A stretch of DNA of 64,000 nt from Styela clava (GCF_964204865.1 NC_135254.1:10540001-10604000); one strand, 5' to 3'; counted from the stretch's first letter, positions 6,845-62,670 are shown. The notes: generated by a model not told the origin, from the sequence alone. Numbers and translations are program-made.

Positions 6845-9800
6845 TTATTTAATATTGTCAATATTTGCATAGGGGTCATCGTTTACTTCAATGTCAGACC
6901 ATTCAGCATCTCCTGTGACATCGGAATTCTGATCTGTTTCAAGTTTATTGACCGTTGCATAAGTTACTTCATTGAAGTTCGAAGAATCATCTTTCTTGGG
7001 TTTCTGTACAACAGCAAGGGTCACTTTATTGTCGTCTCCATCTGAAAATGTTTCCTGTTTCACGGGGCCTTTCGTTTTAGTCTTCTGCACGGTAGCGTAA
7101 GTCGGACCAGGCACTAGCTTTTCATCAAAGGAATTTTCTGGTTGCGAATTTTTTTTAGAATCCTCAACATTGTGTTTTTGAACCGTTGCGTAAACCACAG
7201 GGGAGTTCCCGTCAAGATAACCAGAAACATTAATTTTTTCACTCTTTTTTTGCTTATCAACGACAGCGTATTGAATTTCTGATACATCTGCCGCATCCAA
7301 ATCTTTTGAGGATTTGTATAACTTTTTCGATTTTGTCTTGTTAACAGCAGTATATATAGCATTGTCGTTGCCTTCTGGGGTCACATCGTTTATCTGATTC
7401 TGATGGTTATCGGCAATGGCGTAGAGGGAATCTTGCCCGTTTGATGAGTCAACTTGATCTTCGGGTAAGTGAGAATTATTGTCTGCCTGTCCATCAAGGT
7501 TTGCAAACGTCTGATAACGAAGAGTTTCCGTATTTTGAGAATTGTCTCGACCTGATTCCACATCTCCGGGATCTGTAGCAGTAAAACATGTTAGTGATAA
7601 ATATTAATATGAAGCAGCTGTTTTGACACACTTGAAGCATTTTCGTTTGGAGGAGTTGGAAAATAGGTCGGAGCCATTCAGATTAACTGACTACAGATTT
7701 GAATACGGACTCATACACGCTATTACCTACTCGAGTTACCTATATTAATATAATCACCATAACTGAATGCATGATGAAGTTCATTAGAAACAACAATTCT
7801 GAATTTTTACGTGGAAAGATTCTATTTAGTATCGGTTGGTATCGTTGCAACAGGTTGTGATTTAAATGTAACATCTTATCTTGTTTTACGCTTCTCTGTG
7901 TAGTATTCCTATATGCTATATATTCTCAATATATTTCCCGCAAAATCACTTTTTTCTCATTAGGCATATAGTTCAAATAAGATAATCATATGGTGCACAT
8001 AGAAATGAGTATTCCTTTTTGTTTGTCATACATTTACTAGCATGTGGTAGACAGTAAAGTACAAGAATTCATCAACCCAGATAGAATACGTTGACGTAAT
8101 ACTTTAAATGAAGTTACATTAACTTACGATCTGACATTATATCCCTCGGATTAAGTTGATTTTCCATTTCTAACCCTTTATTGTAATTGCAACGATCTCC
8201 TGTGTTTATGATTCCGCGGCCTCTTCTGAAAGCAAAACTTTAGATTTTATGCATTCTCGGTGAAATGAGTAAACCCTTATTAAAAAGATATTTGGTATCC
8301 GTTCACTATTTATAAAAGATGTAATGTCATAATGTTGGATATATTACCTTTTTTTGAGTTGCTTTGAAAGTATAAAAACAATGATAAGTGCTAAAAGAAG
8401 AAACCCTCCGATAGTTCCCACGACTGGTTCAATGATTGATGTTTGTGCAGCGGGTGTAGATGGACGAAGAATTCCAATCGTCGAAATTTCAGGAATTTCT
8501 GTGTGAGATAATATAGGAATTAATATCAGTACAATATAAATGATCAGAAATTTGATTTAATACATTATGTTCATTTAAACAAGCTGACACATTTTCGCGA
8601 GCTGAAATTAAATTTAAAATATTTTGCAACGCTCACATTTGAAAATTAATCGTACGAAAGGTATTTGACTGCTTCATCCTGATGTTATACATTTGAACAT
8701 TCTAATTGGTCTTTTGATCGATGAACAAATGTTGGCCACGTTCTCACGTGCATTTTAATAAATGACTCAATTGTAGAAAAGGTGAAACTGATTGTATAAA
8801 CTTATGATTTGTTATGGTAAACTATTGCTAATACTATTATAATTATCCCACGTTTCGTTTGTATTTGAGTTTGCTTTCATTGCAGACTTTGCCATGATTA
8901 ACTCTGATCAAGTATAAATTGTTTCTTATTTGCAGCTACTAGTTTAGGATCGAACCCGTAAAATTATAAATTTCTGTTTTTTGTGCGATTTTCATCGTCA
9001 GCAAGTCACTTGAGTTAAAAGAAAGATATTAATGTAGTATTCGTAATTTTTGTTTCATTGTAGCCGTGCACCGGTACACCGGTAGTCATGGTAGTCATTA
9101 CGTCGGTGGGTTCTTCGTTTGTGGACGAGGTGGTTAACTCACCAGCAGTTGTGGTTAATGGAGATGTTGTTTCCGCAACAGTAGTCGTATAACAAGTTGG
9201 GTCTTTTGTACAATTTGCAGTCTGTTAAAAATATTCAATCAAACTAAAAGAAAATTGAAATTGATCAGTATTATTACAATTTCCAAACATGGCTTTTAAA
9301 TGGCAAAAGTTTCTTTAACATACCCGCAGAGCATTAACGAAGGCATGGTCAATAAAAGCATAATTGCTTTTATTGGAAGCGCATGGCTTGCAGGAAGCGT
9401 ATGGCGTATGGAGCGTATGAAATTCAAATTAATGGGGTCCAGACTGAGGAAGTTGCAAGTCACATTTAAAATAAGAATGAGGTGATGAAATCATTTTAAT
9501 ACGTTAGTCAATCTGTTTCGATTAATAACTAATTACGACTAAACTGACTTAAATAAATTTACCTGAGTGGCAATGCTAGATGTAAATAAATATTGTCGTT
9601 GATGAAGTTGAGTAAAAAAATTGGTACTCAATTAACTCACAGATGGCGGATACCGGAACGTAGTATGTGTACTAGATTAGGATAGGGCCATAATTTTAAG
9701 TACAAATAAGACGCGAGTCACTTGGCTAATCCTCGAACTCGTAATAAATCTAAAATAAGCAAAAATTGAAATATAATTATGGCCTAACCCTAACCTGGTA

Positions 9801-11671
9801 CACACACTACGTTCGGGTGTCCGCCATCTCGTTCACATACTTCGGGAGCGCTCAAAAATCTATCAAACGATAGCTATATAATGTAAGTGTGTCTCAACAG
9901 TGTGTACGAGAAAAATGTTTTATTTCCATTTGTAATTTTTAGTTTTGCTACGACACAGCAATAAACATGCTACAAGTAAATAAAATCCTAGGCTCATGTA
10001 ATACTTAGCAATACAGCTAGGTAATGAGCTAGCAGTTTGAACAGAAACACAATCATAATGAGTTACAAATGGAAAACAAGTTTACTTCCGATTGTGTTGA
10101 CGTATCATTGCATGAGTATGGACCAATTCTACCGCTGTCAACACAAATTCTGTCACGCAGCTTTATTCCCGGGCATTCACAACTTCCCCGAGACTCCCAT
10201 GATCCCCAATTCCAGCCTGCAGAAACATATTGATTAAAATAAGAGTTGTATTCTTCATAAGTAAGTATTCTGAAGCAATTTTATATCAGTAAATTTATAT
10301 CAAGATGAACTGTTAATACAGTATAAACGATAGAAACGATAGCATAGCTATGTAAGGTATAAACAGTGATAAGATGACATTACTAAAAACATTAACAGGA
10401 TCTTTTCTGAAATAAAAGCTAATCAAATGTAGTTAACTTTGTACGGAAAAAAGAGACAGGTTTTTCACAGTTTTATTTTATCAAAAACTGAAAGTTTTGC
10501 TGACAGTAAATTATTAATATTGTGCAACTGCTTTTTTTAATAAGCATAATTTATCTAATTGAACATTGGACCAAGATAACCCAATTCTCAATTTTCTTTA
10601 AGAGAATTTGCTCAGAGCAAAGTTAGTCGCACTCACTCGGAAAAAAAAAAACAATCGTCTCTTGATCAAAATACGGCCGGTCGCTGAAATGCCAAGTGCT
10701 ACTGAAATCATACAGTATTTTGTTGGTGCAATAGGCAACAGCGAATAACTATTGATGCGATTCTTGAAACACTTCAAATCAATGCTATAAACTATGGAAC
10801 AGTAAACATTGGCATGAGTAACATGAACTAAACTTAAGTCGATGGCAATATTATATATGAATAGAGTTATTTTCATATAAAAAAAAGAGACATAATTTAC
10901 AAATTGAGTATATATAAATTTATTACAAATAATGCTTGTTACCGATCAATCGTTGGCAGACAAATCCTGTTAGGGCGTTCGCAGCGCATTCGACGTCATA
11001 CCACGGTAGATTTGCATCATACGTGTACCACCATCCCATAGCAACACAATGTTCAAGTAGATGATCAGAAGGTTCTCCTAAGTACCAGTTAGTGTAGTTT
11101 AGTTCTGAATTGTCTTTCCATATGAAGGTATTTTTTGTGACAAATTCCTTTAATCCAATATAAAATCCATAGGGTTCTCCTGTAGACAATAAAATGCCTT
11201 AGAGTAATAAAAAGTTTTGTCGCGTGTAATATCTATTGTATGTAAACATGATTGGTTGGGACTGTTGGACATTATTGTGAACGTGTACAAATATATGAAC
11301 ACTGACGATTTAAGAATAAAAACAAAAATTCGGGGGAAAACGTAAAACGTCCTATATACCTGAGGTATTTGAGACTTGAGTCTGAATAAACGTTTGAATC
11401 TCACTAGTTTTTATCATTGCCATCTCACCATCATTGTTTTTACAGAATGTTTCAGCATCAGCATAACGTTTTTTATCATCTTTTCCAGATACGTAGTATT
11501 GGTAACTTCCAAATCCATTCCACTCACCTCTATCTGGTCGCAAAAATTAAGGGTTCAGGAATAAGCACATAATTTGAAAGACGTGAGGATATATAGTATA
11601 TGCCAACCTGCGCTAACGACGGCAACCATCCAAGCAAATATTCCAACGAATATCGAAAGATTCTCCTTCAT
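6845..11671 (-). CDS. Receptor 1: SP-CTLD-TSP1-mucin-TM-ITIM-rich tail (~553 aa), putative inhibitory lectin receptor
   Basis: Phase-compatible GT-AG exons: 11671-11608 (MKENLSIFVGIFAWMVAVVSA), 11533-11360 and 11179-10943 (CTLD: FC..IGL..W..EPS..C..WYD..C..C), 10216-10086 (TSP1 WNWGSWESRGSCECPG..RDRIC), 9221-9143 (T-rich; this donor could lie further 3'), 8498-8348 (TM VVGTIGGFLLLALIIVFIL then KQLKK), 8225-8128, 7572-6845 (IQYAVV, VVYATV, VTYATV). Total 1662 nt, open. Confidence 0.88.
9641..9829. mobile_element. MITE with ~55-bp terminal inverted repeats in intron 4 of receptor 1
   Basis: agatggcggataccggaacgtagtatgtgtactagattaggatagggccataatt versus aattatggcctaaccctaacctggtacacacactacgttcgggtgtccgccatct. 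Absent from the homologous intron of receptor 2. Confidence 0.75.
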
Positions 11672-14114
11672 TTCCGCGCTAATTATCTAACTTTCTTACC
11701 CCATAACATTCTAATTTGAATCCAAAAATTGAAATAAAACAAGGTTGATATATACCAGATAGGGAAAACTAACGAGTATCGACATAAACTTTCCATGACA
11801 ATACTAAAACATCAAAAGCTATGAATCGATTAGATAACACTAAGTACTATAATCTTCAAAGCAAATAATACAATGCATAATACTTTATGCAATACTTAGA
11901 AATGAATGATTTGATTGCCCACAATAGCATTAAGTATAATTATTCGAAAACCTTCGATATTATTTTTAGTACACTGCAACTAAGAATCATATTTCAAGCC
12001 GCATTACTTTAATTATCAGAAGAGTAATGCAGATAAGACCCTAATTCGACTTGCCGGGATGAAATAATAAGCAGTATGATCTGACAGTTCTTACCTTACA
12101 ATAACTAAGCCTAATATGAGTAATAAAGTTAATAAAGATAATATTTATAAATGTAAAAATAAATAAAGTTTTTGTGGGGGACAGAATGAAACTTCATATC
12201 ACGAGTGGGCTGTTTCAATAACCTTTTAGTCACAACATTTTCGAAATTACAGCAAAGAGATGATTAATGACGAATATGCTTCAGAAGAAAATACCTATTA
12301 CAAGACTGATTAGCCTTGTTATGCGGTATTATCTAGTCACTTATGTTTATGTCATGGATCAAGCAAACCTTATTCATACAGAAACATAGCGGCATTTTAA
12401 AAAATGAAGCACTCAGATATCAAAATTCAATAATTAGAACGGAAGAGGATTGGCTTATTTAGTTGAGATTTGAAAGCAACAATTGTTTCTTTCCTAAAAA
12501 TAAATATCTGTATCATATTTTAATATATGAATTGTTTCTAATATTGGACGAGTTTTTTAATATGAAATCTTTGATTCTGGTCTCACCAATCAACTCAAAT
12601 TATTCGCTAATGTTGAACATGATATTTCGATCATATTCTGTTTGTTTTTGTAGTATAATAAACAATAACTAATAAAGTAAATAATATTTATTTCACTATT
12701 GATACATGAATAACAGGCGGAAAAAATGAATGAATTGTATTGTTTGCTACATTGATTGGCTCATTGGTTGCGTTTTCCGTTTTGGCTTCTACTGCAGAAG
12801 CCATACGATAACCATTACTATGGCCTTCTTACTAAGAAAATGCATGTCGAGAAAACAACAACGGAGAATATGACTAATCTAAGCAGAAAGAAGATGAAAA
12901 TTACATAAACAACAACTATTAAAGTCATACATGAATATCATGACAACTTTATAAGCAAAGTCTGGTAAAGCGATGAATATTGTGGGCTATACTAGAGTTT
13001 TAACCTAATAAAAGTTTAGTAATCTCTTGTGACTGACTGCTGTGCTATCGTAAATGGCAGAAGGATTATTGAACCATTATTAAAAATACACTATTTGATA
13101 TTTGTAGAAAAACTATTCATTTATGAAATAATAAATCCATCAGATTAGATCTATCGCGTCTTATGGAACAAAAAAAATACAAACATAAAATTCAAAAATA
13201 TGTGTTGAAATAAATGAACGATTGTTGGTAAATGAGATGAATTCAGGTTTTGAGTTAGACAAGAAAAAATTTAAATTATATGTAACAACATGATTTATCG
13301 AATATCATTCTTTCTCTTAAGAGGTGTAATTAGACACTTTTATTTTCCATTGCAGAAATGAGTGTAACATTACGATGATGACTTGTGCAACAAACACTAT
13401 TCTCTGAGAGTAGATGTGTGAGCTACATATTTAGTGACGACTTGTGTTTATTTGGTATGTGTATGTGACTCGTCCAATTTTTTAGAATTTGACCAAGTTT
13501 CGGGGAAAGTTTAACGAAATTTGATTCAAAATTCAAGATTATATATTGTAAACTGTATTTTAGAGATACACTAAAATAACTGTTAACGTTCTGGCATTTG
13601 CAAAAATGATTCACTGGAATAATTAGTCATAAAAAACGAACCTTGGTGATCCCCTCGCATTTAATTGATCATAGTATAGTTAAATCTGTATTCAATTTGC
13701 ATTTGTTCGTTTATCATTGCATCTTAGCCACCTGTGCTGTATATTTGGAAAATATGGGAATTTTGCACTGCGACTGAATATCTCGAACCGAAATTAGAAT
13801 GGCGATAACAAGCAGTGATATGTAAATGGGGCATTGGCGCATGTATCAAGCGCACGTATTTGACTTATTATACATATTTTCAATTTCAATAAAATATGAA
13901 TGAATAATATACTAGTGGCAGAAGTAACTAAATGCCAAGGATTTATCAATTCTTTGTGGAAGAAATTTCTTCAAAATGTTTTGGTATTTTTATTATTCTT
14001 TTTGTTTAACAGAGCGTTTAACGTTTTTCAGAGCTAATCATTTTTACTGCTAGTTACATCCGCAAAGCATTACAATCTATATTTGAATTTTGTCAGCTTA
14101 TATGATTCAGAAGA
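11672..14114. promoter_or_regulatory. Divergent (putative bidirectional) promoter spacer, unit 1
   Basis: About 2.4 kb between the ATGs of head-to-head genes. Length and sequence are conserved in all four units. Confidence 0.55.
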
Positions 14115-17100
14115 ATGAGAAGCGAATTAATATTTTTGTTGGTTCTTCTTCAATATCCGAGGCATCTGAACGCAGCAGGTATTATTTCATTGTTATGACT
14201 TTTTTTTAGAAAATTCACTGAAAACAAGGTTACTCATACAGGTATAAGGGAGATTGATCTGATCAAAGATTTTGAGACTATAAGAGCTTAAAGGATAGAA
14301 TTGAGTGTTGGTAAATACCGATCGGCACTAAACTTAAAAGCAGTTCATATCAATACAATCAGTAAAAGATGTGTGAGGTATTGAATTCCATATACATGGA
14401 GTTTTTGGAATGAACTTAGGAATTATAGGTACACTAACAGTGAACCGATGAGAGCTCACAGTCAATCGTATTTAACGACTGAAAACATTTTAGGGGGACA
14501 ATATTCCCATTTTTCAACATTTGGTAATCGGTAGCAACGGTTGCCTGACAATATGAAATGGTAAAATTTGTTTAGATAATATAGGAAAACATTACGTTAT
14601 GTCTCAAATATTAATTTATTTTGCCAGAATGTCGTGAAACGCCCATGGATCTTGTATTTATGCTGGATGGATCGGGTTCAATCACAAATGTGAATTGGGA
14701 GCTTATGAAATCATGGGTCAAGTTGGTAGCAGAAAATTATGACTTAGGCGGATTAACACAGATTGGCGTCGTTCAGTTCTCACACTGGTTTCCAAATGAA
14801 AGGTAAGCTTAGAAAGATATAATCATTCAACAAATCCACGTCAATAAAGTAAGATTTTCCTTTTATTCATTTTGTAAGCCGAATTTATAATTTTTCTTTA
14901 AATTATTCAAAGCAACTGCTCAATCAATTAAAATTAATTTACCTATAAACAACTGCCATGCCATGAATGATTTTTTTTCAAGCGTCAGACCATGAATGTA
15001 GTTTCGAAAATTTTCTGACTGATGTACTGAGCTGTGTTATATATTGTAATATTTTTGGACACGTTAGTGGACATAACGATCGTTTTGTTATTATGTTGTT
15101 ATTGTTCTTGTTGTTCTTTGTTACAGAGAAAAAAAAATCGTTTTTCTCTTTGATCACTGGACCAATCGCTTTAAAATTTCAGTGTTTATTGAGGATCGAA
15201 TTTTTTGCTAAAATGCTATAACTTTGATTTATTTTAAATATTCAATCGAGCTGTATGAAATTCGTTATTTTGTGTGCTATGACGTCATTAAAGTTTGCCA
15301 CCATTTGGCGCTACGTTTTCATATATTGAACATATCTCTCTAGTTTCAATTACCCAAAAAGAGTCAATTTCAAACTTTGCCACTTTGTTGTTCCACTTCG
15401 CTTCGTGTTTTCACTGCTTTTATTTGAGTACAGTCAGCATACATTCTTCCAAAATCATTTTCGGCTTTTCTTTGGGTTTTCGAATCCATTGTCATTCAAC
15501 CACAAAATATGATAAAATGATTTTCATTTTTTTTAACAGCGCACAGCCATATTTAAAAACTGAAATACAGCTCGGAAAACTGAAGACTGAAGCCCAATTT
15601 AAGGTAAAATATTCATCGAGCGTTGAATACCGCTGAGGGGGGTAGCGTCACGGTACGATCAGACGAGTTTGTGTTTCAGAGTGTTTGCTGATAATGTCTC
15701 AAGCAGGTAGAATAAAAAGTATTCTTCTATAAATAAAATACAATGGTGAAATTTCGAGTTAGTTATTGGGCGACATAGGTGTCAAAAAAAATTTGAGAAA
15801 ACAGCAATATCATTCGTAAAATCAAAATTACTAAAAACCAAAATTTAGACGGACTTCGTGTGTACACGAAATGTAGTTTCCCAACAATGCTATTGAGCTA
15901 GTGTGGAGTCACGTTCTATGCAGGATAGAATTTAAAGGAAAATTTGTCGTATGATTTATCTTATTAAAAAGATTTGTTCACAAATTTGTGATATTTAAAT
16001 ATATCAAAATGCAATTAGCTTTAAAATAATAACTGAGTATTCCTTAGGCCGCTGTTGACGAAATATCAATTCATGGATTCACAACTTACACTGCACATGC
16101 CATCAACAAAACAGTAAACGAAGATTTCATGAGATCTGATCGTTTTTATGATGCTTCAGTGAAGAAAATCATTATTTTATTTACAGATGGAAGGTAATAA
16201 CTTGTCTGAACAATGTCTGAATACATGCAAAATGCCCCTATAAATCGTATCGTTAACTGTTGTTCATGTTTTTGTTATTATTGTTAATTTTCACGGTTCA
16301 TGTAATGGTAGTTAGCAGAGTTCTTTTGATATATCCGTATATTTAGCCCCTTTGTTTTTCAACTTGGGTTTGTGCGCGATATATATTATTTTTATACCAT
16401 CAAGATATTAGTTGTTGAAAATCTAAATGAATGTTATTTTAAAGCTTATTATTCAGAATTGCTACTTCAATATTTACCAAATTATTCTAATCTTAGACAT
16501 CCAAAAATTAAGAAGTAGTATAAAACCGTTTTTGTTTTGCTCGATTTATTGAAGGTATGTAGATTATATGTATGTAGATTGTAGATGATTGTAGATAATT
16601 TTTTAAATCTTTTGAAGATCTACCGACAGAAATGATTTGCTTTTGTCAGCAAAATATGCTCGGTCAAATGGGATTACTATATTTGCAGTTGGTGCTGGAG
16701 GTTATGTAATAGAGGAATTACAGGTAATCTGAAAAGTTGTAACAAATTGAAATAAGAGAAATTTTATGTTTCAATATATTATAGCTTTTCTACCTTTTGT
16801 CTAATCATTATATTTCTGTGTATTAAAGATTGTTCATCAACAAGACTGAGAAAGTATAACTAAATTAGTTATCAGGATAAAACTCTTTTTGACTGAGATT
16901 GATAAGTAACAATGTAGGCTACTGTACTTGTTTAAATGTTGTTTACATATATGAAAACAAGAATACCTATAAGCCATATTTGCATGATAATTTCTTTCTA
17001 ACAAAATGTCTATAATTCTAGCCATTAATTTGTATTCCGTGATTAGATAAGTTAGAACTCTATTAAGTAGTATTTTAAAATATTGAATAGTCATCATAAG

Positions 17101-27100: not shown

Positions 27101-28345
27101 CCACGGTAGATTTGCAAAATACGCGAGAAACCACCCCATAGCACCACAAGATCGGGAACTCTCACTAGAAGGTTCTCCTGTGTTCCAGTTAGTGTAGGTT
27201 AGTTCTGAATTGTCATTCCATATGAAGGTATTACTTGTGCCAACTTCCTTTAAGCCAATATAAAATCCATATGGTGTTCCTGTAAGTGTAGACAATAAAA
27301 TGCTGTAGAGCAGGATTTTCCAAACTGGGTCCTCGGGCCCGCGGTACGTGTTGACTGCACAGAGAGTCCGCAGCGATATGAAAAGATTGTGATTAATCTT
27401 TAACGATTGATCTTAATCAAAAAGTCATAGCATCTTTTTGGTTCAGCGTTGTGGACAAATATTGCAGTCAGTAAAAGCGATTTTAATTTCCTTGCTATTT
27501 TCGACGACCTACATTGTGAGGCAGCATTTTCAGCTTTTACCAATATGATGACAAAATACAGGTCGGGACTTGCCGTATAATCGAACCTACAAGTTTACTT
27601 GTCACAAATTGCTCGAGAATCGATAAATTGAGCAGTGAAAAGCATTATTACCGTTTATGTTGTTATGTTGACAAAAAAAAATTCTTTCCTCGTTGGTTAG
27701 GCACAAAAACTGATACGGGGTCTGTCAAACCTAAGATTCAAAAATAGGGGTCAGGCTCAAAAAGTTTGGGAAACCCTGCTTTAGAGTAATAAAAAGTTTT
27801 GTCGTGTGTAATATTTGTTGTATGTAAACATGACTGGTTGAAACTGTTGGAGATAAATGAAATTATATTCTTATATATGACGACTGACGAATTAAAAATT
27901 CTCAAACAATCGTATGGAGTATTCTAACGCAAATCCCAAAACGCACGAACAAAGATTCTAATGAACATAACGTTAAATACTCTTAAGCAAATTCATTCCG
28001 GGATCTGGGGTGAAGCGTAAAATGTACTGTTTACCTGAGGTAGCTGAGACTTGATTCTGAATAAACATTTGAATCTCGCTAGTTTTTATCATTGCCATCT
28101 CACCATCAGTGTTTTTACAGAATGTTTCACCATCAACATAGGATTTTTTATCATCTTTTTCAGATACGTAGTATTGGTAACTTCCAAATGCATTCCACTT
28201 ACCTCTACCTTGTCGTAAAATAAAGAGTTTATGAATAAGCACATCATTTGAAAGACATGGTGATATATTATATATACCAACCTGCGCTAACGACGGCAAT
28301 CATCCAAGCAAATATCCCAACGAATATCAAAAGTTGCTTTCTCAT
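21167..28345 (-). CDS. Receptor 2: SP-CTLD-TSP1-CTLD-(TSP1-mucin)x2-TM-short Tyr-motif tail (~718 aa), putative activating lectin receptor
   Basis: 13 phase-compatible exons: 28345-28282, 28208-28035, 27279-27043, 26373-26243, 25806-25755, 25053-24880, 24540-24292, 23838-23711, 23308-23095, 22785-22658, 22263-22050, 21843-21738 (TM LLVAIISSIVTLILAAILFGIGLLI), 21452-21167 (YDKI, YEIP, YEEI, YEEM, YINS). Total 2157 nt, open. Confidence 0.85.
21930..23930 (-). repeat. Intragenic ~1.05-kb tandem duplication of the TSP1 exon plus mucin exon
   Basis: The 128-nt TSP1 exon and 214-nt mucin exon, with flanking intron sequence, occur twice at an offset of about 1045-1053 nt. Confidence 0.9.
27311..27778. 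mobile_element. hAT/Charlie-like MITE in intron 2 of receptor 2
   Basis: TIRs caggattttccaaact / agtttgggaaaccctg and 8-bp TSD ctgtagag/ctttagag. The empty site (ccttagag) is seen in receptors 1, 3 and 4. Confidence 0.88.
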
Positions 28346-51238: not shown

Positions 51239-54200
51239 TTAATTGATGTACGGATGTTCTTTTGTTGTGCTATTATTCATTTCTTCGTATTGATGATCTC
51301 CGTCTTTAATTTTCTCATAATTATGCGGGATTTCATAATTTTCTTCTTTCTCTTCTCTTAACTCATAATTTCCGGAGTTCAGTTGTGATGTTTGAATTTC
51401 ATCGAAGTTTTCATGATAACTCGGGACGTCATTAACAACCCTATTCATCTCTGAAAGACTTTGTGGTTGAGTTGCGATTTTTTGAGAATTCCTCCTGTTA
51501 ACAAAAATTAAGTTAGAATTAATTAATAAGTAGGATTTTAAATAAGAAACATTGAATTTGTTTTCGGAATTGCTTCTACCATAGAGGAGTTAGACAAAAC
51601 AATCGACGAAAATGTTAGAGCCCAGTATTGCAGACATTGTCCCAGACATTGAGATTGCGCTTACAGCTGTATAAAGAGACACACCTTACTGATTCAATTA
51701 AGAGTGAATACTCCAAATTTTCGGAAAATATACACATTTTGTTGTAGTATCGAACATTTCTCACCTCATTATTTTGCATCTACAAATCAGCGAACCAATT
51801 CCAAATAGAATGATTGCAAGAATCAATGTGGCTATGGATGAGACAATTGCAACCAATAAATTGTCGTGGCCTGCAATATATTTCAACATATAGTAAAAAG
51901 AATCATAAACGTTAAAAACAATTTTCAGCATTGAAGACAGGTTAAACATGAGAATCAGAAAGTCAGTGAGCATTTTATGGAACCACAAAATAGTAGTTTC
52001 AAAAACTCTTAACTTTGTGCATTTAAGATTAATGTCTCTTATAATTTGTAAGCTATATAATCTTACCACAAGAAGTCATTGTGGTAGTATTGATTGCACC
52101 AGTGGGAAAGAAAATGTTCATCTCCGTAGATTTTGTGTTATTTGCATTGGCAGACAATGTGGAAGTATGTGTCATGTCATTGAGAGTTGTAAATTTATGA
52201 TAAATATTTGTTGTTGTCATTTCAGCAGGCGCCGCGGTGGACGTTGTATTACAGGCAGTGTCTCTTGAACAATTGGTCGTCTGAAGAAAGTAATTGTGTT
52301 TAGCAATTTTTCGATACAATATATGCACGATAATATTTGTATATTCCAACATTTATTTAAATCCGAAGTTTAATGGTTTAATGTTCTTCAAAAAGTTAAA
52401 CAAATTTAAAAATGCTCACAAAAATATTAATTCACACGCTTATGAAAAATAACGAAAGTGAATAATTTAAATATATTCCAACTTTTTAGGAGAATTTGTC
52501 AATAGCCAGGTCGGGCACGCTGAATAAGAACTACTAGATATTTACGTTTACGACTGCGGCTTATACGCTATAAAATAGTAAAAACTATTCAAACAACATA
52601 GAATAATGATCCTTTTTCTTTTGAGCCCTTTAGAAAATTAGAAATTGTCAACTTACTACAAAAAATGGCATTTTTTTTGTTTCTTACCTCAAAATTAGAA
52701 CCAATGCAAATATTGGGCCCCAATCTTCCCGAGTCAATGCATGTTCGATAGCGTTCTTTCATCATTGAGCTGCAGTTGCATGTACTCCATGATGACCACG
52801 TTTCCCAATATCTTTCTGCACATTGTAAAGATAATCTTAATTCAGAATTACCGCGCGCATACTCTTTTCATCGATGTTGTTGATGATGCATATTCAAACT
52901 ATATCATATTTCTATTTTTCTGCTCATTCAAATTGTTGTTTTTTTACAGTCAATCAATAGTTTATTTATCACCAAAATGGACATACACTTGAATTAAACA
53001 AAAACTAGAAAAAAAAAGAGACATCGATGAAATGAAACACGCCATATCGGTGAGTAAAATAATTTACGAATTGTTAACGTATTCTTCTAATACTTGAGAT
53101 AAAGTAAATATGAAGTGATGACGTGACATGTCAAACTGCTATATTTATTCAAAATAGCTTCAATGTAATCAAGGATTTGTTCAAAGGGAATTGTTTTAAA
53201 ACAAGTTTTTTTGCCTGTTTCGATTAGAATGACTGTATTTTTTTACGTAGTAAATAGGTTTAAACATAAATAGGAAAAATTGCCAATTGCTTTTTATTCG
53301 TATACAAATATACAAATATCGATGACTTGCTTATACACGCCTGCTCAAGCTGTAGTGCAATACGTCCGCAAACATGGTCGGCGGAGAAAGACGTAAACGA
53401 TAAGCCATTACGTGAACCTCTGTGTCGACGAGAAGTCCAACATTCTTGCACATTGTCACATCACTCATGAGGCCAGGGGCGAATATACCATTGGGCAAGG
53501 TAGGCTAAAGCCTTGAGGCCTCTAACCTCGTGGGCCTTAACAATCAATTTTGAACTTATATTAATTTAAAATCGTTTTTGATTTGTGAAGGCTTGTTCCA
53601 GGATAATGTCACTTTAAAACTTTAAAACTAGTTATCATATTTGTTATTCAGGTTATTTTTTTCAAATATTTACCGAATAAAAGATTGAAAAGTTAAAATA
53701 TGCCCGAATAAATGAATTTGTAATAATACATAAACTTGAAATCCCTATTATGGCGTTATATCCCATCGATGACAGTGAAACTTGAAGCAAACACTATAAT
53801 ATTCATTTATGCACTAATAATTATTCAAGAGTAGTTAGTTTTGAACGGAATATTTATGATAGAATTCAGCTGCTCGGTTTTGAGCAGTTTTTTTTATCAA
53901 AAACTGAAATTTCTGCTGTCAGTAAATTTATAATATTGTGCGATCGCTGAAATGCCAAGTGCTACTGACATCATACATTATTTTGTTGGTGCAATAAGCA
54001 ACAGCGAATACCTGTTGATGCGATACTTTAAATTATTTAAATTAATGTTTTAAAGTTTATATAAACTATCGAGCAGTAAACATTGGCATGATTAAAATGA
54101 ACTAAATTAAAGTTAATGGCATTAAAATACATAAATAGTTATTTGTATAAAGAAAAAAGGACATAATCTACAAATTAAGTAGACTTATTACAATAAAAGT

Positions 54201-54940
54201 TTGTTACCCATTAATCGTTGACAGACAAATCCAGTCGGTGCATTCGCAGCGCATTTGACGTCATACCACGGTAGATTTGCATAATACGTGTGAAACCACC
54301 CCATAGCAACACAAGGTTCAGGTTTATCAACATGAGGTTCTCCCAAGTACCAGTTATCGTAGGTTAGTTCTGAATTGTCCTTCCATTTGAAGGTATTGCT
54401 CGTGCCAACCTCCTTTAATCCTATATAAAATCCATAGGGTTGTCCTGTAGACAATAAAATGCCTTAGAGAAATGAAAAGTTTTGTCGTGTGTAATATATA
54501 TTTGTTGTATGTAAACATGATTGGTTTGGACTGTTGGACATTATTGTAAACATGTACAAATATATGAACACTGACGATTTAAGAATAAAAACAAAAATTC
54601 GGGGGAAAACGTAAAATGTCCTATATACCTGAAGTAGCTGAGACTTGATTTTGAATAAACGTTTGAATCTCGCTCGTTTTTATCATTGCCATCTCACCAT
54701 CATTGTTTTTACAGAATTTTTCACCATCAACATATGATTTTATATCATCTTTTCCAGATACGTAGTATTGGTAACTTCCTAATGCATTCCACTCACCTCT
54801 ATCTGGTCGCAAAAATAAAGGGTTCAGGAATAAGCACATAATTTGAAAGACGTGAGGATATATAGTATATGCCAACCTGCGCTAACGACGGCAACTATCC
54901 AAGCAATTATTCCAACGAATATCAAAAGATTCTCCTTCAT
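51239..54940 (-). CDS. Receptor 4: SP-CTLD-TSP1-mucin-TM-short Tyr-motif tail (~392 aa), close paralog of receptor 3
   Basis: Exons 54940-54877, 54802-54629, 54444-54208, 52815-52688, 52280-52067, 51870-51765, 51494-51239, all open. Confidence 0.87.
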
Positions 54941-57287
54941 TTCCGCGCTAATATCTAACATTTCTAACTTTCTTAGCCCATAACATTCTAATTTGAATCC
55001 AAAAATTGAAATAAAACAAGGTTGATATATACCAGATAGGGAAAACTAACGAGTAACGACATAAACTTTCCCTGACAATACTAAAACATCAAAAGCTATG
55101 ATTCGATTAGATAACACTACTACATATCTCCAAAGCAAATAATACACAATACATAATACTTTATGCAATACTTAGGAATGAATGATTTGATTGCCAACAA
55201 TAGCATTAAGTATAATTATTCGAAAACCTTCGATAATATTTTTTAGTACACTGCAACTAAGAATCATATTTCAAGCCGCATTACTTTCATTATCAGAAGA
55301 GTAATGCAGATAAGACCCTAATTCGACTTGCCGGGATGAAATCATAAGCAATATGATCTGACAGTTCTTACCTTACAATAACTAAGTCTAATATGAGTAA
55401 TGAAGTTAATAAAGATAACATTTTTATAGAATACAAAATGAAACTTCCTATTACGAGTGGGATGTTTCAATAACCTCCTAGTCACAACAGTTTTGAAATT
55501 ACAGCAAAGAGATGATTAATGAGGAATATGCTTCAGAAGAAAATATCTATTACAAGACTGATTAGCATTGTTATGCGGTATTCTCTAGTCACTTATGTTT
55601 ATCTCAAGATTGGCCTATTTAGTTGAGATTTGAACGCAACAATTGTTTCTTTCCTAAAAATAAATATCTGTATCATATTTTAATATATGAATTGTTTCTA
55701 ATGTTGGACAAGTTATTTAATATGAAATCTTTGATTCTGGTTTCAGCAATCAACTCAAATTATTCGCTTATGTTGAAAATGATATTTCGATCATATTCTG
55801 TTTGTTTTTGTAGTATAAGCAACAATAACTATAATAAAGTAATAAATATTCATTTCACGAATGACACATGAATAACAGACGGAAAGAATGAATGAAATGT
55901 ATTGTTTGCTACATTGATTGGCTCATTGGTTGCGTTTTCCGTTTTGGCTTCTACTGCAGAAGCCATACGATAACCATTACTATGGCCTTCTTACTAAGGA
56001 AATGCATGTCGAGAAAACAACAACGGAGAATATGACTAATCTAAGCAGAACGAAATTGGAAATTATATAAACAACAACTATTAAAGTCATAAATAAATAT
56101 CATGACAACTTTATAAGCAAAGTCTGGTAAAGCGATGAATATTGTGGGCTATACTAGAGTTTTAACCTAATAAATGTTTAGTTATCTCTTGTGACTGACT
56201 GCTGTGCTATCGTAAATGGCAGAAGGATTATTGAACCATTATTAAAAATACATTATTTGATATTTGTAGAAAAACTATTCATTCATAAAATAATAAATCC
56301 ATGAGTTCAAATCAATTGCGTTTTGTGGAACAAAAAAAATAATCAGAAAATTCTAAAATTTGTGTTGAAATAAATGAACGATTGTTGGTAACTGAGATGA
56401 ATTCAGGTTTTAAGTTTCACAAGAAAAAATTTAAATTATAGGTAACAACATGATTTCTCGAATATCATTCTTTCTCCTAAGGGGTGTAATTAGACACTTT
56501 TATTTTCCATTGCAGAAATTAGTCTAACATTACAATGATGACTTGTGCAACAAACACTATTTTCTGAGAGTAGAAGTGTGAGCTACATATTTAGTGACGA
56601 CTTGTGTTTATTTTGTATGTCTATGTGACTCGTCCAATGTTATAGAATTTGAGCCAGTTTTGGGGAAAGTTTAACGAAATTTGATTCAAAATTCAAGATT
56701 ATATATTGTAAACTGTATTTTAGAGATACACTAAAATAACTGTTAACGTTCTGGCATTTGCGAAAATGATTCACTGGAATAATTAGTCATAAAAACGAAC
56801 CTTGGTGATCCCCTCGCATTTAATTGATCATAGTATAGTTAAATCTGTATTCAATTTGCATTTGTTCGTTTATCATTGCATCTTAGCCACCTGTGCTGTA
56901 TATTTGGAAGATATGAGCATTTCGCACTGTGACTAAATATCCTCAATCAAAATTAGTATAGCGATACCAAGCAGTGGTGTGTATGTAAATGGGGCATTGG
57001 CGTATGTATCAAGCGCACGTATTTATTACATATGCCTGAAATTATACATATTTTAAATTTCAATAAAATTTGAATAAATTAATATACTAGTGGCAGAAGT
57101 AACTGAATGTCAAGTATTTATCAATTCTTTGGAACAAGTTTCTTTAAAATGTTTTGGTATTTTTATTATTCATTTTGTTTAACAGAGCGTTTAACGTTTT
57201 TCAGAGCTAATCATTTTTACTGCTGGTTACATCCGCAAAGCATTACAATCTATATTCGAATTTTGTCATCTTATATGATTCAGAAGA
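54941..57287. promoter_or_regulatory. Divergent promoter spacer, unit 4
   Basis: Homologous spacer between head-to-head ATGs, with a small internal deletion near 55605. Confidence 0.55.
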
Positions 57288-60200
57288 ATGAGAATCGAAT
57301 TAATATTTTTGTTGGTTCTTCTTCAATATCCGAGGCATCTGAACGCAGCAGGTATTATTTCATTGTTATGACTTTTTTTTAGAAAATTTACTGAAAATAA
57401 GGTTACTCATACAGGTATAAGGGAGATTGATCTGATCAAAGTTTTTGAGACTATAAGAGATAAAAGGATAGAATTGAGCGTTGGTAAATACCGATCAGCA
57501 CTAAACTTAAAAGCAGTTCATATCAATACAATCAGTAAAAGATGTGTGAAGTATTGAATTCCATATATATACATGGAGTTTTTGGAATGAACTTAGGAAT
57601 TATAGGTACACTGACAGTAAACCGATGAGAGCTCACAGTCAATCGTATTTAACGGCTGCAAACATTTGGTAAGCGGTAACAACGGTTACCAGACAATATG
57701 AAATGGTAAAATTAGTTTAGATAATATAGGATTACATTACGTTGAATATTGTTCCAAATATTAATTTATTTTGCCAGAATGTCGTGAAACGCCCATGGAT
57801 CTTGTATTTATGCTGGATGGATCGGGTTCAATCACAAACGTGAATTGGGAGCTTATGAAGTCATGGGTCAAGTTGGTAGCAGAAAATTATGACTTAGGCG
57901 GATTAACACAGATTGGCGTCGTTCAGTTCTCACACTGGTTTTCAAATGAGAAGTAAGCTATAGAAAGAGATTTTATTTTATTTAATTAGATTTTAAGCCG
58001 CAGTTATAAATATTTTATTTAAATTATTCAAAGCAACTGCTCAATCAGTCAAGATCAAATTGCTTAGGAACAGCTGCCATGACATGTGTGGGACTTAACT
58101 TTGTGGCGAAGAATAATTCTTTCATGAGCGTCAAATGAGATCATTATCATCATCATGATCATCATAGTTCAAATATTGTGTGAACAGTGTTTCATATTGT
58201 ATATTTTGTACTGTTGTATATTTTAGTGCGTTATTGAAAATTAACAAGAAATTAGTTTTGGTCGTTTTACACTTTGTTCCACTTCGCTGCGAGTGTTTTC
58301 ACGACTTTTATCTGCTGGGTACAGTAAGACGAAGATACATTCTTCTAAAATCATTTTTGGTGTTTCTTAGTGTTTTCAAATTAATTGTTATTCAATAAAA
58401 AATATATGATAAAATAATTTTCATTTTTCTTTTCATAGCACACAGCCATATTTAAAAACTGAAATTCAGCTAGGAAAACTGAAGACCAAAGGCCAATTTG
58501 AGGTAAAATATTCATCAAGGGTTGAACAGTCGAGACTGTTACCGTCACGGTAAGATCAGACCACAGTTCTTGCTGGTGAGGTATCGAACATGGCGGAATA
58601 AAAATTATTCCTCTCTAATTAAAATACAATAGTAAACTTTCGAGATAATCATTTGGTTTTATAATTTCTCAAAAAAAAAAATACCATTCGTAACAACAAA
58701 AAAACCAAAACCAAGAATTTAGCATATTTTAGATTCACATGTACAGTAAACGCAGTTGCAAAACAAACCTAGTGAGATAGTGTGGAGTCACGTTCTATGC
58801 AAAAAAAGAACTAAAGTTATATTTGTCGTATTAAACACCTTCAGAATTCAAAATGCAATTAGCTTCAAAATAATAACTGAGTATTCATTCATTAGGCCGC
58901 TGTTGACGAAATATTAATTCATGGATTCACAACTTACACTGCACATGCTATCAACAAAACAGTGAACGAAGATTTCATGAGATCTGATCGTTTCTATGAT
59001 GCTTCAGTAAAGAAAGTCATTATTTTATTTACAGATGGAAGGTAATAATTTTATTTATTTCAATGCCCGAATACACGCAAAATGCATCTTTGAATCGTAT
59101 CGTTAACTGTTGTTCATGTTTTTGTTATTATTGTTAATGTTCACGGTTCATGTAATGGTAGTTAGCAGAGTTCGTTTGATATAACCGTATATTTAGCCCC
59201 TTTGTTTTTCAACTTGGGTTTCTGCGCGATATATATTATTTTTATACCATCAAGATATTAGTTGTTGAAAATCTAAATAAATGTTATTTCAAAGCTGATT
59301 ACTAATTTATTATTTACCAAATTATTCTAATCTTAGACATCCAAAAATTAAGAAGTAGTATAAAACCGTTTTTGTTTTGCTCGATATATTGAAGGTATGC
59401 TCGTGTAACAAGTCTTAAATATGTGTGTAGGTTGTAGATGGTTATAGATAATTTTTTGAATCTTTTGAAGATCTACCGACAGAAATGATTTGCTTTTGTC
59501 AGCAAAATATGCTCGGTCAAATGGGATTACTATATTTGCAGTTGGTGCTGGAGGTTATATAATGGAGGAATTACAGGTAATCTGAAAAGTTGTAACAAAT
59601 TGAAATAAGAGTAATTTTATGTATCAATATATTATAGCTTTTCTATCTTTTGTCTAAGCATTATATTTCTGTGTATTAAAGATTGTTCATCAACAAGACT
59701 GAGAAAGTATAACTAAATTAGTTATCAGGATAAAACTCTTTGACTGAGTTTGATAAGTAACAATGTAGGCTACTGTAGTTGTTTAAATGTTCTTTCTATT
59801 TGGGCATTCGTGAGTGAGACCAGCTTTTTCTCTGTTTCTTATATCTGGGATTGGCAAAACAAATTTCATTCAAATAATATTTTTCTATTAAATAATTAGG
59901 CATGATGATGGAGAAATGACGTATCGCGGGAGCTCGACCTGATATGCGACTGGCGACGTTCCATTTAATCGCTGTAGCCCCAGGGGTGATGACATTTGTG
60001 GCTGCGAGCCATGGCACACTTGATTTGGATTTGTTCGCAATTACTGGATGGTGTGCGATATAGTAACTGAGAAAACACGCAAACCTATTAGCCATACTCG
60101 CATATTAATTTCATTCTGACAAAATGTCTATAACTCTGGCGATAAATTTGTATTCAATGATTAGATAAGTTAGGACGCCATGATCCAGGAGAATTTTGAA

Positions 60201-62670
60201 ATATTGAATAACCATCATTGTATGATACACCGATAAAGTCAACTAATACGCATTATGCACATGCACGTGATTTGCATATAAATCAACCCGGTAGACACCC
60301 AGGATCTTCGCTGATACATGAGGACCCGTTCTCCAGCAAAACGTTAAGCCATGCATGCAAAATTGCAGATCAATAACGGCAGTATATTGCGGAGCTGCCA
60401 GTTTATTTGGACGCTGCGCGGCTCTTCAGCATCTCAGCTTGTGCGATTGTCTGTGGCTAATTGTCAAAACATGTTCACTTGAATTCCTAACTTCCAAAGT
60501 TTCCTCAGTTGTGGAATATCGAAAATAGTTTACGAGAAAATCTCCTGGAGCAACATCCAACAAATCGATACATCCATACGTTTGATATCAGAGCATTATG
60601 TTTCCTTATTGCAAACCATAATACACTGCATTTGATGAATGATCTCGTTTGCAATGAATTTTCCTTTAGGAATATTTGATATTTTGATTCGAGCCTTTTG
60701 CCACCATTCACGTTTTGCCTGTGCTTGAACATATTTGAATAAACAGCGCTAGGATTGAGGGCATGGACGTGCCAAACTTTGCTGCTGTCCAGTATGAGGT
60801 TATGACAATGATGCCCCCACACTTTAAAAATAATTCGGGGGATAAACAAATTAAAGCTGTTGCTATACATGAGAATGAATAAATTAAAGGTCACGTATGA
60901 GGAGAATGTTTGTAAATATGTGATAAAACACGCAATGAACAGACGAGCACATTGGCGGACAAGTGCGGTCAGCCACCACTATTATCACAATCAGTCACAC
61001 AAGACTACACACGTCATCTCAGCTTTCACTTGAATAAAACACATAGAGAAAAAATGTGTGATATCGCGAACTCTACAGCTTGGATCTGCTGCCTCTTCCC
61101 CGCTGGCCCCCCCAGAGTGAGGATAAAATTAAATATTAAGTTGAATTAAATGTTTCAAGCATGGTCTCTACTAGCACAATAAATCGCTTCTCAAATATCT
61201 CAAAACCTGTCAGTTAGAAACAGATTTGAGCTATATTCATCTATAGATCATAGTTGAATTATACCCGAGGAAATTTGAACTCGACCTCGACAAAAACAAC
61301 TATGTGCTGGCATGTAATAAGACTCCGGCATCCCTTTTAATTTAGCATTCACTGGTATGATTGTCTCCATTACGTTTTTAATATTCATAGTTGTAGCAAA
61401 TTTTATTTATGTCTTTGTATTCACTTTTACCGACATAGTTGAATTGGGATCATATGAGGAAGAATCGTAACAAAAATATTTTTTCAGTAATGAACAAGAC
61501 CTAACCTTGTATAGCTTCGCTACATCGGATGTTTAAACCGAAACAAATAAAAAGTTTACCACGATAATTTGTGATTGAAAAAGCAGATTAGGACAATCGT
61601 AAAATGCCCACAAGTAAAACTCCACTGACGAATAAATTTCATATACTTTGTCAGTAACTTTTATTTACAGTTTATTGCAAATGGCCAGATCAATAACAAT
61701 GAACGGGTGATTACAGTTTCAAATTTTACTAGGCTGAATACTACGGTAAATATTTTAAAGCAAGGTATATGTGCTATCCAAGGTAATGTTGATATTAATA
61801 GTCAGTTTTTATTGAGGCCGTTACGACATGTTAGAAGCATATAATTTCGAACTACGTTTTCAAAAAATTCTTTGCGCCCGAATCTGATATTGAGCCAAGA
61901 CACTATAATAATTAAATGTTCCACATCTCGACGTCATAAGCCGAAAAGAAATTCGATTTTTTTTGTTTGTTAAAATCAGTGGATTATAAGATGGGATGCT
62001 TTTTGCAGGCTACCACAACTCGTTTTTGAAAAGCATTTCGTTCAATGCGCAGAGCTAATAATAACTCATTCTCTAAAGATTTTATAGCATATAATATAGA
62101 AATTCACATTCACCACAAGGTATAACAGCTAAAATGTACAAATTAAAGAGGGAATTATATAGGATTCAAAAAAAAATATTTATATTTGTTTATAGTTCCT
62201 TTCATAGTGTCTCGCTACACTTGCTCAACTTCATCGTTAGAAGTTCAATGGAAAACAACTACATTTAAGTCGATGTTCTCATACAGACTTCAAATTCAGG
62301 TTACCTTTATAAATAGAATGAAAGTCATTTCATTGATTTGAACACTTTAACATCGCGTTAGAACGTTCAATTTTATGCTAAATATCACCTTTTGTATTTA
62401 AATTATAAGGATCTCAAGACCAAAGAAATCAAGGAAACAAGCGTTCAAATACTCATGAAAAAAGAACCAACAATAAAAATTCACGGAGAAAAGACATCTT
62501 CGGAGTTTGCTTGTGTCACTACGACAAATTTGTATATTTCAAGCAACTACGAAATCGTTGTTGAGCAAATATCGGCAAAAACAAACAATCAAATAAAAAC
62601 CAAATCCAAAGTTCTTCACAATGCAAATGGGAAGACTATTATGCGGTTAACGTTTTTTGACTTTGTCTAA
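57288..62670 (+). CDS. Secreted VWA + FN3-like protein, copy 4 (343 aa)
   Basis: Exons 57288-57351, 57778-57952, 58439-58502, 58896-59041, 59471-59576, 61671-61782, 62196-62299, 62410-62670, all open. Confidence 0.88.

What the first reader, a model, noticed from the sequence alone, without database searches (positions are those of the whole stretch)
6845..62670. Repeated head-to-head cassette: lectin/TSP1 signalling receptor always paired with a secreted VWA-FN3 protein
Seen: four intact pairs with ATG-to-ATG spacing of 2.35-2.44 kb and a conserved spacer, plus a relic fifth pair at the left edge. The unit of duplication is the pair. Known: C-type-lectin folds can bind VWA/I-domains (snake botrocetin with vWF-A1, EMS16 with integrin alpha2 I-domain). 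CTLD+VWA fusions exist in nematodes and VWA+TSP1 fusions in apicomplexan TRAP/MIC2. Tightly linked gene pairs underlie ascidian recognition systems (s-/v-Themis). Inference: a co-regulated receptor plus soluble co-receptor, opsonin or ligand module for innate or self/non-self recognition. I do not recognise it as a described system.
Basis: partly seen in the sequence, partly recalled or inferred. Interest (0 to 1): 0.9.

Follow-up and report, generated by a model that had tools for sequence, protein, structure and literature searches.

The report
Lectin receptor and VWA gene pairs
In the sea squirt Styela clava, a young tandem array repeats a cell-surface lectin receptor gene back-to-back with a secreted VWA-domain gene, but all the pairs are copies of one ancestral pair, so the repetition does not show that the two proteins work together.

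Summary
The window (Styela clava, C5:10,540,001-10,604,000) holds four minus-strand C-type lectin (CTLD)-TSP1-like-stalk-TM receptor genes. Each lies head-to-head with a plus-strand signal-peptide-VWA gene, ATG-to-ATG 2444, 2403, 2442 and 2348 bp. A decayed fifth pair sits at the left edge.

The pairs are 13.2-16.6 kb tandem duplicates, part of an array of about 365 kb. All 14 VWA copies there face a type-1 receptor, but 10 of 24 type-1 receptor 5' ends have no VWA.

RNA contigs from three studies show both genes transcribed, and VWA exons 1-6 spliced at canonical GT..AG sites. The 343-aa VWA reading frame is intact in all four window copies, with a complete MIDAS metal site and dN/dS of 0.21-0.45. 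At least five array copies are broken.

The "FN3" label was not supported by any search. The spacer is two separable promoter modules about 2.3 kb apart, not one shared promoter. Outside the array, relatives of each gene are unlinked.

My reading is a co-amplified divergent pair of two working genes. A receptor-partner relationship is untested and somewhat disfavoured. No paper found describes it.

The parts
6845..11671 (-). Receptor 1. Exons in order: signal peptide 11608-11671, CTLD 11360-11533 and 10943-11179, TSP1-like 10086-10216, Thr-rich stalk from 9221, TM within 8347-8556, tail 6845-7573. The tail has three consensus ITIMs at 7259-7276, 7181-7198 and 6950-6967.
   Evidence: Open reading frames and splice sites were read directly. 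Lectin_C scores E 1.9e-8. ITIM motif scan. The stalk and TM exon borders are inferred.
11672..14114 (.). Spacer of pair 1 (2442 bp between the start codons).
14115..19120 (+). VWA gene 1. Eight exons, 343 aa, reading frame intact.
   Evidence: Exon borders were transferred from copy 3.
21167..28345 (-). Receptor 2, probably one gene with two CTLD modules. Order: signal peptide at 28345; type-1 CTLD 28036-28206 and 27044-27274; TSP1-like 26213-26440; 52-nt linker exon 25755-25806; type-2 CTLD 24800-25072 and 24287-24565; TSP1 23675-23881; duplicated stalk/TSP1; TM; tail 21167-21470 with YEEI-x6-YEEM and YIN.
   Evidence: The linker exon keeps its AG/GT sites and its frame, with in-frame indels, in five other copies. 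No RNA evidence for the junction was obtained.
28346..30747 (.). Spacer of pair 2.
30748..35847 (+). VWA gene 2. 343 aa, intact.
37821..41517 (-). Receptor 3, a chimeric form: type-1 signal peptide and CTLD joined to type-2 TSP1, stalk, TM and tail. Exons: 41454-41517, 41206-41379, 40789-41025; then the TSP1 exon, which starts within 39244-39441 and ends about 39271; stalk within 38639-38917; TM within 38347-38658; tail 37821-38075.
   Evidence: An RNA joint at 41379/41454 (CT..AC) and contigs over exons 1-2. All junctions were read and are in frame.
41518..43958 (.). Spacer of pair 3. The receptor-side module is roughly 41600-42355 and the VWA-side module roughly 42600-43890.
   Evidence: No RNA contigs lie over most of it.
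43959..49269 (+). VWA gene 3. Exons: 43959-44022, 44473-44647, 45109-45172, 45592-45737, 46162-46267, 48249-48360, 48795-48898, 49009-49269. The transcript reaches at least 43891.
   Evidence: GT..AG joints for exons 1-5, and a loose end that reads into exon 6, in runs from three studies. Exons 7-8 are inferred from conserved open frames and canonical sites.
51239..54940 (-). Receptor 4. Same chimeric architecture as receptor 3.
54941..57287 (.). Spacer of pair 4.
57288..62670 (+). VWA gene 4. 343 aa, intact.
11..1477 (+). Relic of a fifth pair: spacer remains (11-1135), an 81% copy of VWA exon 1 (1203-1266), and a piece of VWA intron 2 (1312-1477). The rest of the VWA gene is gone.
   Evidence: The partner lectin exon lies at C5:10538781, left of the window.

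Best explanation
This is a young, lineage-specific tandem array on Styela clava contig C5, about 365 kb long (roughly 10.485-10.850 Mb). One ancestral divergent gene pair was copied many times as a block.

One member is a type-I membrane receptor: signal peptide, C-type lectin domain, TSP1-like repeat, mucin-like stalk, TM helix, and a tail rich in tyrosine motifs. It exists with an ITIM tail or an ITAM-like/YxxM tail, and with one or two lectin modules.

The other member is a 343-aa secreted protein: signal peptide, a collagen-VI/matrilin-type VWA domain with a complete MIDAS metal site, and a beta-rich C-terminal domain of about 120 aa from no recognised family.

Shown here:
- The arrangement and its extent across the array.
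- Transcription and splicing of both genes.
- Intact reading frames and purifying selection on the VWA copies.
- Faster change in the lectin binding loops.
- Loss or breakage of the VWA gene in many units.

Inferred:
- Each gene has its own promoter module in the 2.3 kb spacer.
- The repeated pairing is inheritance by descent and is not evidence of partnership.
- The receptors act as paired inhibitory and activating recognition receptors.
- The VWA protein is a metal-dependent binder of matrix or some other ligand, whose link to the receptors is so far only positional.
For: Origin by duplication. The units are 85-95% identical tandem duplicates. All 14 VWA exon-2 copies lie on the plus strand between C5:10517311 and 10830399, each 3.6-4.2 kb from a minus-strand type-1 lectin exon.

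Separable parts. Ten of 24 type-1 lectin 5' ends have no VWA gene, yet those sampled keep open lectin exons. The receptor-side ~750 bp of the spacer accompanies VWA-less type-1 5' ends as well as paired ones (15 full or near-full spacers plus 8 with only that part). The VWA-side ~1.3 kb occurs only with VWA copies or their relics. Neither part occurs elsewhere in the genome.

No pairing outside the array. Lectin relatives lie on C18, C1 and C3. VWA relatives lie at C5:10.22 Mb, 9.6 Mb and 16.9 Mb and on C9, C13 and C19. None are adjacent.

Both genes are real and expressed. Canonical splice joints and exon contigs appear in four runs from three studies.

The VWA gene is under selection. Five complete copies are open, with dN/dS of 0.21-0.45. 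Neutral drift at comparable divergence would leave an ORF open only 12-39% of the time. MIDAS residues are present in every intact copy.

Birth and death. In-exon stops or truncation were read in three copies. Two more are indicated by stops.

Asymmetric evolution. The lectin loop region has dN/dS 1.14 against 0.38 elsewhere in the exon. VWA proteins are 94-100% identical across intact copies.
Against: - Every VWA copy that exists faces a receptor, and no VWA copy of this type has moved away. A functional constraint on linkage would produce the same pattern.
- Both genes appear in the same RNA runs. Those runs were chosen because they hold this stretch, so this is weak evidence.
- The VWA-side spacer is as conserved as the exons (91-96%). 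That could reflect shared regulation, gene conversion or simply youth.
- Synteny in other species, tissue-level co-expression and binding could not be tested.
- Exons 7-8 of the VWA model and the junction of the two-lectin receptor lack RNA support here.
Confidence: 0.62

Rival explanations
1. The VWA protein is the soluble co-receptor, opsonin or ligand of the adjacent lectin-TSP1 receptor. Pair linkage is kept by selection, so the cassette is a functional recognition module.
For: All 14 VWA copies are head-to-head with a type-1 receptor. Both genes are transcribed in the same four runs. The VWA gene is under purifying selection with an intact MIDAS site. From general knowledge and not tested here: C-type lectin folds can bind A-domains, as snake botrocetin binds vWF-A1 and EMS16 binds the integrin alpha2 I-domain.
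Against: The pairs are copies of one event. Ten of 24 receptors lack the VWA gene but keep open lectin exons. At least five of 14 VWA copies are broken next to receptors. The promoter modules are separable and the 5' ends are about 2.3 kb apart. Relatives outside the array are unlinked. The VWA protein barely varies while the lectin loops diversify.
Confidence: 0.2
2. The VWA copies are decaying passengers with no function of their own. This would fit the RefSeq models of only 117-158 aa.
For: RefSeq proteins for these genes are truncated: P0022 and P0152 at 117 aa, P0151 at 158 aa. Low-depth contigs retain intron 3. Five of 14 copies carry stops or truncation.
Against: The exon 3-4, 4-5 and 5-6 junctions are the better-supported forms in the RNA contigs. 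Five complete copies keep a 343-aa frame with canonical splice sites, and dN/dS is 0.21-0.45 in all ten pairs. Neutral simulation makes that unlikely.
Confidence: 0.1
3. The repeats are an assembly artefact, for example haplotypes or reads stacked in tandem.
For: High similarity between units.
Against: The units differ in structure: ITIM tail against the second tail, one or two lectin modules, and different insertions in VWA intron 5. They diverge by 5-20%. RNA contigs carry variants that match different copies.
Confidence: 0.03

Closest known systems
Vertebrate paired-receptor clusters (NK gene complex Ly49/NKG2, and KIR/LILR in the LRC)
   Same: A tandem multigene cluster evolving by birth and death. 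Related ectodomains are joined to either ITIM tails or activating-type tails. Change is faster in the ligand-binding region. Unrelated genes are carried inside the cluster.
   Different: These receptors are type-I proteins with a lectin domain, a TSP1-like repeat and a mucin stalk, in one or two modules. They are not type-II lectin-like or Ig receptors. The activating-type motifs sit in the receptor's own tail. A secreted VWA gene accompanies most units. No homology to the vertebrate clusters is implied.
WARP (VWA1), matrilins, collagen VI/XXI-type A-domains and mussel PTMP1
   Same: Secreted proteins with a signal peptide and a MIDAS-bearing VWA domain. The closest solved relatives of the nearest full-length paralog (P0042) are collagen VI chains, PTMP1 and integrin alpha-X, alpha-M and alpha-1 I-domains. 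RefSeq calls the genes collagen alpha-1(XXI)-like or matrilin-1-like.
   Different: There is a single VWA domain plus a C-terminal domain of about 120 aa that matches no Pfam family. By eye it shows an FN3-like W...Y...LxxxxxY pattern. It has no collagen triple helix, no EGF and no coiled coil. It lacks the integrin I/LEG(T) motif that the ascidian integrin-like relatives P0154, P0158 and P0163 carry.
Ciona s-Themis/v-Themis linked self-recognition pairs
   Same: Tightly linked genes, on opposite strands, for a membrane receptor and a secreted protein in an ascidian.
   Different: The domains are different. In Themis both partners are highly polymorphic and co-vary. Here the secreted partner is nearly invariant between copies, and the pair is a tandem array, not a few polymorphic loci. 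Polymorphism between individuals was not measured.
Classical bidirectional-promoter gene pairs
   Same: Head-to-head orientation with a conserved intergenic region.
   Different: RNA-supported 5' ends are about 2.3 kb apart, not under 1 kb. The intergenic region consists of two modules that occur separately elsewhere in the array.

Membership tests
VWA domain (PF00092) with MIDAS | Significant match to the VWA profile | tested here: met
   Exon 2 alone scores E 1.9e-9, 38.4 bits, against a cut-off of 23.8. Exons 2, 4, 5 and 6 align to the VWA domains of P0042 and P0154.
VWA domain (PF00092) with MIDAS | The DxSxS ... T ... D metal-site residues | tested here: met
   DGSGS, TTYT and FTDG are present in all intact copies. 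One pseudogene has a stop inside DGSGS. Metal binding itself was not tested.
VWA + FN3 proteins (WARP/VWA1, FACIT collagens) | A recognisable fibronectin type III domain after the VWA domain | tested here: inconclusive
   No fn3 hit at E <= 10 on exons 7 and 8 of three copies. The atlas gave no family. A local phmmer search gave nothing. There were no homologs of 47-150 aa. Only a by-eye motif pattern fits. The two exons were not searched or folded as one joined sequence.
C-type lectin-like domain receptors | Match to Lectin_C | tested here: met
   E 1.9e-8 for type 1 and 5.8e-6 for type 2 on the second lectin exon.
C-type lectin-like domain receptors | The Ca2+/sugar site motifs EPN or QPD together with WND | tested here: not met
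   Type 1 reads EPS or EPH (QPS in one copy) with WYD (WYG in one copy). Type 2 reads EPN with WHT. This points to non-canonical, possibly protein, ligands.
Thrombospondin type 1 repeat | Match to TSP_1 above threshold | tested here: inconclusive
   Type 2 scores 19.7-20 bits against a cut-off of 21.6. Type 1 has no hit but shows the WxxWxxW and CxC pattern.
Paired inhibitory/activating immune receptor cluster | ITIM consensus [ILVS]xYxx[ILV] in one tail type | tested here: met
   Three matches in receptor 1. This tail exon occurs only inside the array, in about eight copies.
Paired inhibitory/activating immune receptor cluster | An activating motif or adaptor-coupling residue in the other tail type | tested here: inconclusive
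   YxxI-x6-YxxM, YxxM and YxN are present. The second half-site is M rather than L or I. Signalling cannot be tested here.
Paired inhibitory/activating immune receptor cluster | Diversification concentrated in the binding surface | tested here: met
   The EPx-to-WxD region has dN/dS 1.14, with 43 of 66 pairs showing dN > dS. The rest of the exon has 0.38, with 4 of 66. No formal site model was run.
Bidirectional-promoter gene pair | Divergent starts within about 1 kb, sharing one promoter | tested here: not met
   The receptor exon 1 contig reaches 41543 and the VWA transcript reaches 43891, leaving about 2.3 kb. The two spacer halves occur separately.
Linked receptor-ligand recognition pair (Themis-like) | Both partners variable and co-varying | tested here: not met
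   Between intact paralogs, VWA is 94-100% identical at the protein level, while the second lectin exon is 69-82% identical. Allelic polymorphism was not tested.
Lectin-fold/A-domain complexes (botrocetin-vWF A1, EMS16-alpha2 I) | Physical binding of the lectin fold to the VWA domain | not tested
   Neither full domain is available as an unaltered reference, because both are split by introns and the RefSeq VWA models are truncated. No complex prediction was run.

The most novel reading that the evidence does not exclude
The secreted MIDAS VWA protein is a constant soluble subunit or bridging factor. It would be made from the same chromatin neighbourhood as the variable lectin-TSP1 receptors and would bind a conserved part of their ectodomain. 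Together they would form a two-component recognition system in a non-vertebrate chordate, built from parts not used this way in vertebrates.
Probability: 0.15. Interest if true: 0.8.

Novelty: new variant of a known kind. Interest (0 to 1): 0.5.

Why it matters
Tunicates are the closest living relatives of vertebrates but lack the vertebrate NK and antigen receptors. A large, fast-evolving cluster of lectin receptors with inhibitory-type and activating-type tails would be an independent invention of paired immune receptors.

If the VWA neighbour proved to be a partner, it would add a soluble component to that system. As things stand, the value of this work is a caution: repeated adjacency inside a tandem array is one observation, not fourteen.

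The work also corrects the gene models. The VWA gene encodes 343 aa, against the 117-158 aa RefSeq models. One receptor in the window probably carries two lectin modules.

Tried and rejected
The array was therefore analysed from the window plus 18 alternating 10-kb pieces and from coordinate tables. Paralog loci could not be fetched.
- Receptor proteins in the public databases could not be retrieved. No contiguous exon is long enough for the length window of the homology search.
- Complex prediction and structure prediction were not used. Neither the full lectin domain nor the full VWA protein exists as an unaltered reference, and this report does not claim binding.

Left out on purpose: spliced models were searched exon by exon by reference only. 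Joined coding sequences were used only inside scripts, to check frames and compute dN/dS.

Searches that led nowhere:
- FN3 was not found by Pfam at E <= 10, the protein atlas, local phmmer against 235 fetched proteins or the search for homologous proteins with exon 8.
- The repeat search of the spacer found nothing notable.
- Four literature searches found no description of this array.

Readings rejected:
- Whole-exon positive selection on the lectin exon. Mean dN/dS is 0.6, and dN exceeds dS in 1 of 55 pairs.
- The spacer as a dispersed transposon. It is specific to the array.
- Exons 21167-25072 as a separate unpaired receptor. No signal exon was found, whereas a conserved in-frame linker exon was.

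Contig depths were not used to rank expression, as that tool advises.
Full report
**Source and layout**

The window is Styela clava contig C5, 10,540,001-10,604,000. It has about 32% GC and no gaps. Self-comparison shows tandem duplicates at 85-95% identity. Measured between VWA start codons, the periods are 16.6, 13.2 and 13.3 kb.

Stop-to-stop frames and Pfam place lectin, TSP1-like, stalk, TM and tail exons on the minus strand. VWA exons lie on the plus strand.

**Checking the observation**

Receptor start codons are at 11671, 28345, 41517 and 54940. VWA start codons are at 14115, 30748, 43959 and 57288.

The left edge (11-1477) holds spacer remains, an 81% copy of VWA exon 1 and a piece of intron 2. 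Its lectin exon lies just outside the window.

The spacer aligns over its whole length in nine units.

**Gene models**

RNA contigs from four runs in three studies were laid on 41150-47149.
- They show canonical GT..AG joints for VWA exons 1-5 and a loose end that reads into exon 6.
- They show a CT..AC joint for the 74-nt first intron of the receptor.
- Loose ends at the first and second lectin-exon borders carry other copies' signal-peptide and lectin-exon sequence. The signal-exon 5' end is also supported by the X5 contig 41454-41543.

Adding two conserved downstream exons with canonical sites gives an eight-exon, 343-aa VWA protein. This frame is intact in all four window copies and in one more complete copy.

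The RefSeq proteins for these genes (117 and 158 aa) stop in a retained intron 3 or skip exon 4. The spliced form is the better supported in the contigs.

Receptor 3 (37821-41517) was read junction by junction and is in frame.

The exons at 21167-25072 have no signal exon of their own. A 52-nt exon at 25755-25806 (phase 0 to 1) links the upstream TSP1-like exon to them. It keeps its splice sites and its frame, with in-frame indels, in five other copies. I therefore read 21167-28345 as one receptor with two lectin modules. The window then holds four receptors, each paired with a VWA gene.

The module exons have compatible phases. This explains the one-lectin, two-lectin and chimeric forms.

**The whole array**

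All 14 VWA exon-2 copies lie between C5:10517311 and 10830399 on the plus strand. Each has a type-1 lectin exon 3.6-4.2 kb upstream on the opposite strand. There are, however, 24 type-1 lectin exons, so 10 have no VWA gene. Two of those ten keep VWA relics.

The spacer occurs nowhere else in the genome.
- Its receptor-side ~750 bp accompanies VWA-less type-1 5' ends as well as paired ones.
- Its VWA-side ~1.3 kb occurs only with VWA copies or their relics.

This pattern, together with the ~2.3 kb between RNA-supported 5' ends, argues for two promoters, not one bidirectional promoter.

Outside the array, relatives of the lectin exon (C18, C1, C3) and of the VWA exon (C5:10.22, 9.6 and 16.9 Mb; C9, C13, C19) are not adjacent. 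A Pfam VWA scan of the genome finds nothing near the outside lectin relatives. These searches give lower bounds only.

**Selection**

VWA copies have dN/dS of 0.21-0.45 in all ten pairs, with dS of 0.055-0.097. Neutral drift at 2-5% per lineage would keep such a frame open only 12-39% of the time. The intact copies are therefore under selection.

Decay also occurs. In-exon stops were read in two copies, and a truncated last exon in a third. Two further copies show stops.

The second lectin exon has dN/dS of about 0.6 overall. Within the region from the EPx motif to the WxD motif, chosen in advance as the usual lectin binding surface, it is 1.14. Elsewhere in the exon it is 0.38. The sugar and calcium motifs are incomplete.

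Tails come in two kinds. One has three consensus ITIMs. The other has YxxI-x6-YxxM, YxxM and YxN.

**Identity of the VWA protein**

Its nearest full-length relative is P0042, a secreted S. clava protein with two VWA domains, encoded 260-320 kb to the left of the array. P0042's closest solved relatives are collagen VI chains, mussel PTMP1 and integrin I-domains.

Ascidian integrin-like relatives carry the I/LEG motif after the domain. This protein does not.

The C-terminal ~120 aa gave no FN3 signal in any search. By eye, a W...Y...LxxxxxY pattern fits FN3. The two exons could only be searched separately, so the label stays open.

**Interpretation**

The repeated pairing is real, but it reflects one ancestral juxtaposition copied many times. 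Both genes are functional.

The points that speak to partnership lean against it without excluding it:
- relatives outside the array are unlinked;
- the VWA gene is lost or broken beside surviving receptors;
- the promoter modules are separable;
- the VWA protein is near-invariant next to diversifying lectin loops.

Binding, tissue co-expression and cross-species synteny remain untested.

**Limits**

- Read laying was kept to 6,000 bases.
- Joined spliced proteins were not sent to any search or fold tool.

**Earlier work in this scan**

Other agents already reported the receptor array from neighbouring windows. I found no published description.

Noticed in passing
window 25755-25806 (-), within 21167-28345: A 52-nt Cys-containing linker exon (phase 0 to 1) joins a type-1 lectin-TSP1 module to a type-2 lectin-TSP1 module. 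This gives a probable receptor with two lectin modules. The exon is conserved, with in-frame indels, in five other array copies.
   Followed up: partly
window 21911-22876 and 22956-23929: An internal 82% duplication inside the receptor repeats a TSP1 exon and a stalk exon. The ectodomain exons have compatible phases (1-1, 1-0, 0-1), so modules can be added, lost or swapped in frame.
   Followed up: partly
window 45173-45591 (VWA intron 3); proteins P0022, P0151, P0152: RefSeq models of the VWA genes are only 117 or 158 aa, because they read into intron 3 or skip exon 4. The RNA contigs mainly show the normal exon 3-4 junction, with low-depth contigs that retain the intron.
   Followed up: yes
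window ~47385-47710, in VWA intron 5 of every copy: A dispersed repeat of about 320 bp with hundreds of candidate copies genome-wide. It sits in intron 5 of the VWA copies, so it was inserted before the array expanded. Copy 3 has extra inserted pieces at 46600-46880.
   Followed up: partly
window 42585-43950 versus 41590-42540: The VWA-side half of the spacer is as conserved between nine units (91-96%) as the exons. The receptor-side half is 84-89% identical. Gene conversion, promoter constraint or different ages could each explain this.
   Followed up: no
L004:9332-9506 (C5:10613.3k) and L008:6802-6976 (C5:10690.8k): Two VWA pseudogenes have single in-exon stop codons. One stop falls inside the MIDAS DGSGS motif. 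The copy at L007 (C5:10667.6k) has a truncated last exon.
   Followed up: yes
window 2688-2843 (-): An isolated, divergent (41-43%) fragment of a lectin exon lies between the left-edge relic and receptor 1. It is probably a remnant of another decayed receptor.
   Followed up: no
proteins P0154, P0158, P0161, P0163 (Styela, Ciona, Clavelina): Ascidian proteins of 400-480 aa annotated as integrin alpha-like consist of N-terminal FG-GAP-like sequence, an I-domain and the I/LEG motif, and then end. They are either truncated models or genuinely short integrin-like proteins.
   Followed up: no
L001:1444-6248 (C5:10481444-10486248, +) and L016:496-5719 (C5:10844496-10849719, +): At both ends of the array, more divergent lectin-TSP1 receptor exons lie on the opposite (plus) strand, including an ITIM-type tail at the right end. 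This suggests inverted border units.
   Followed up: no
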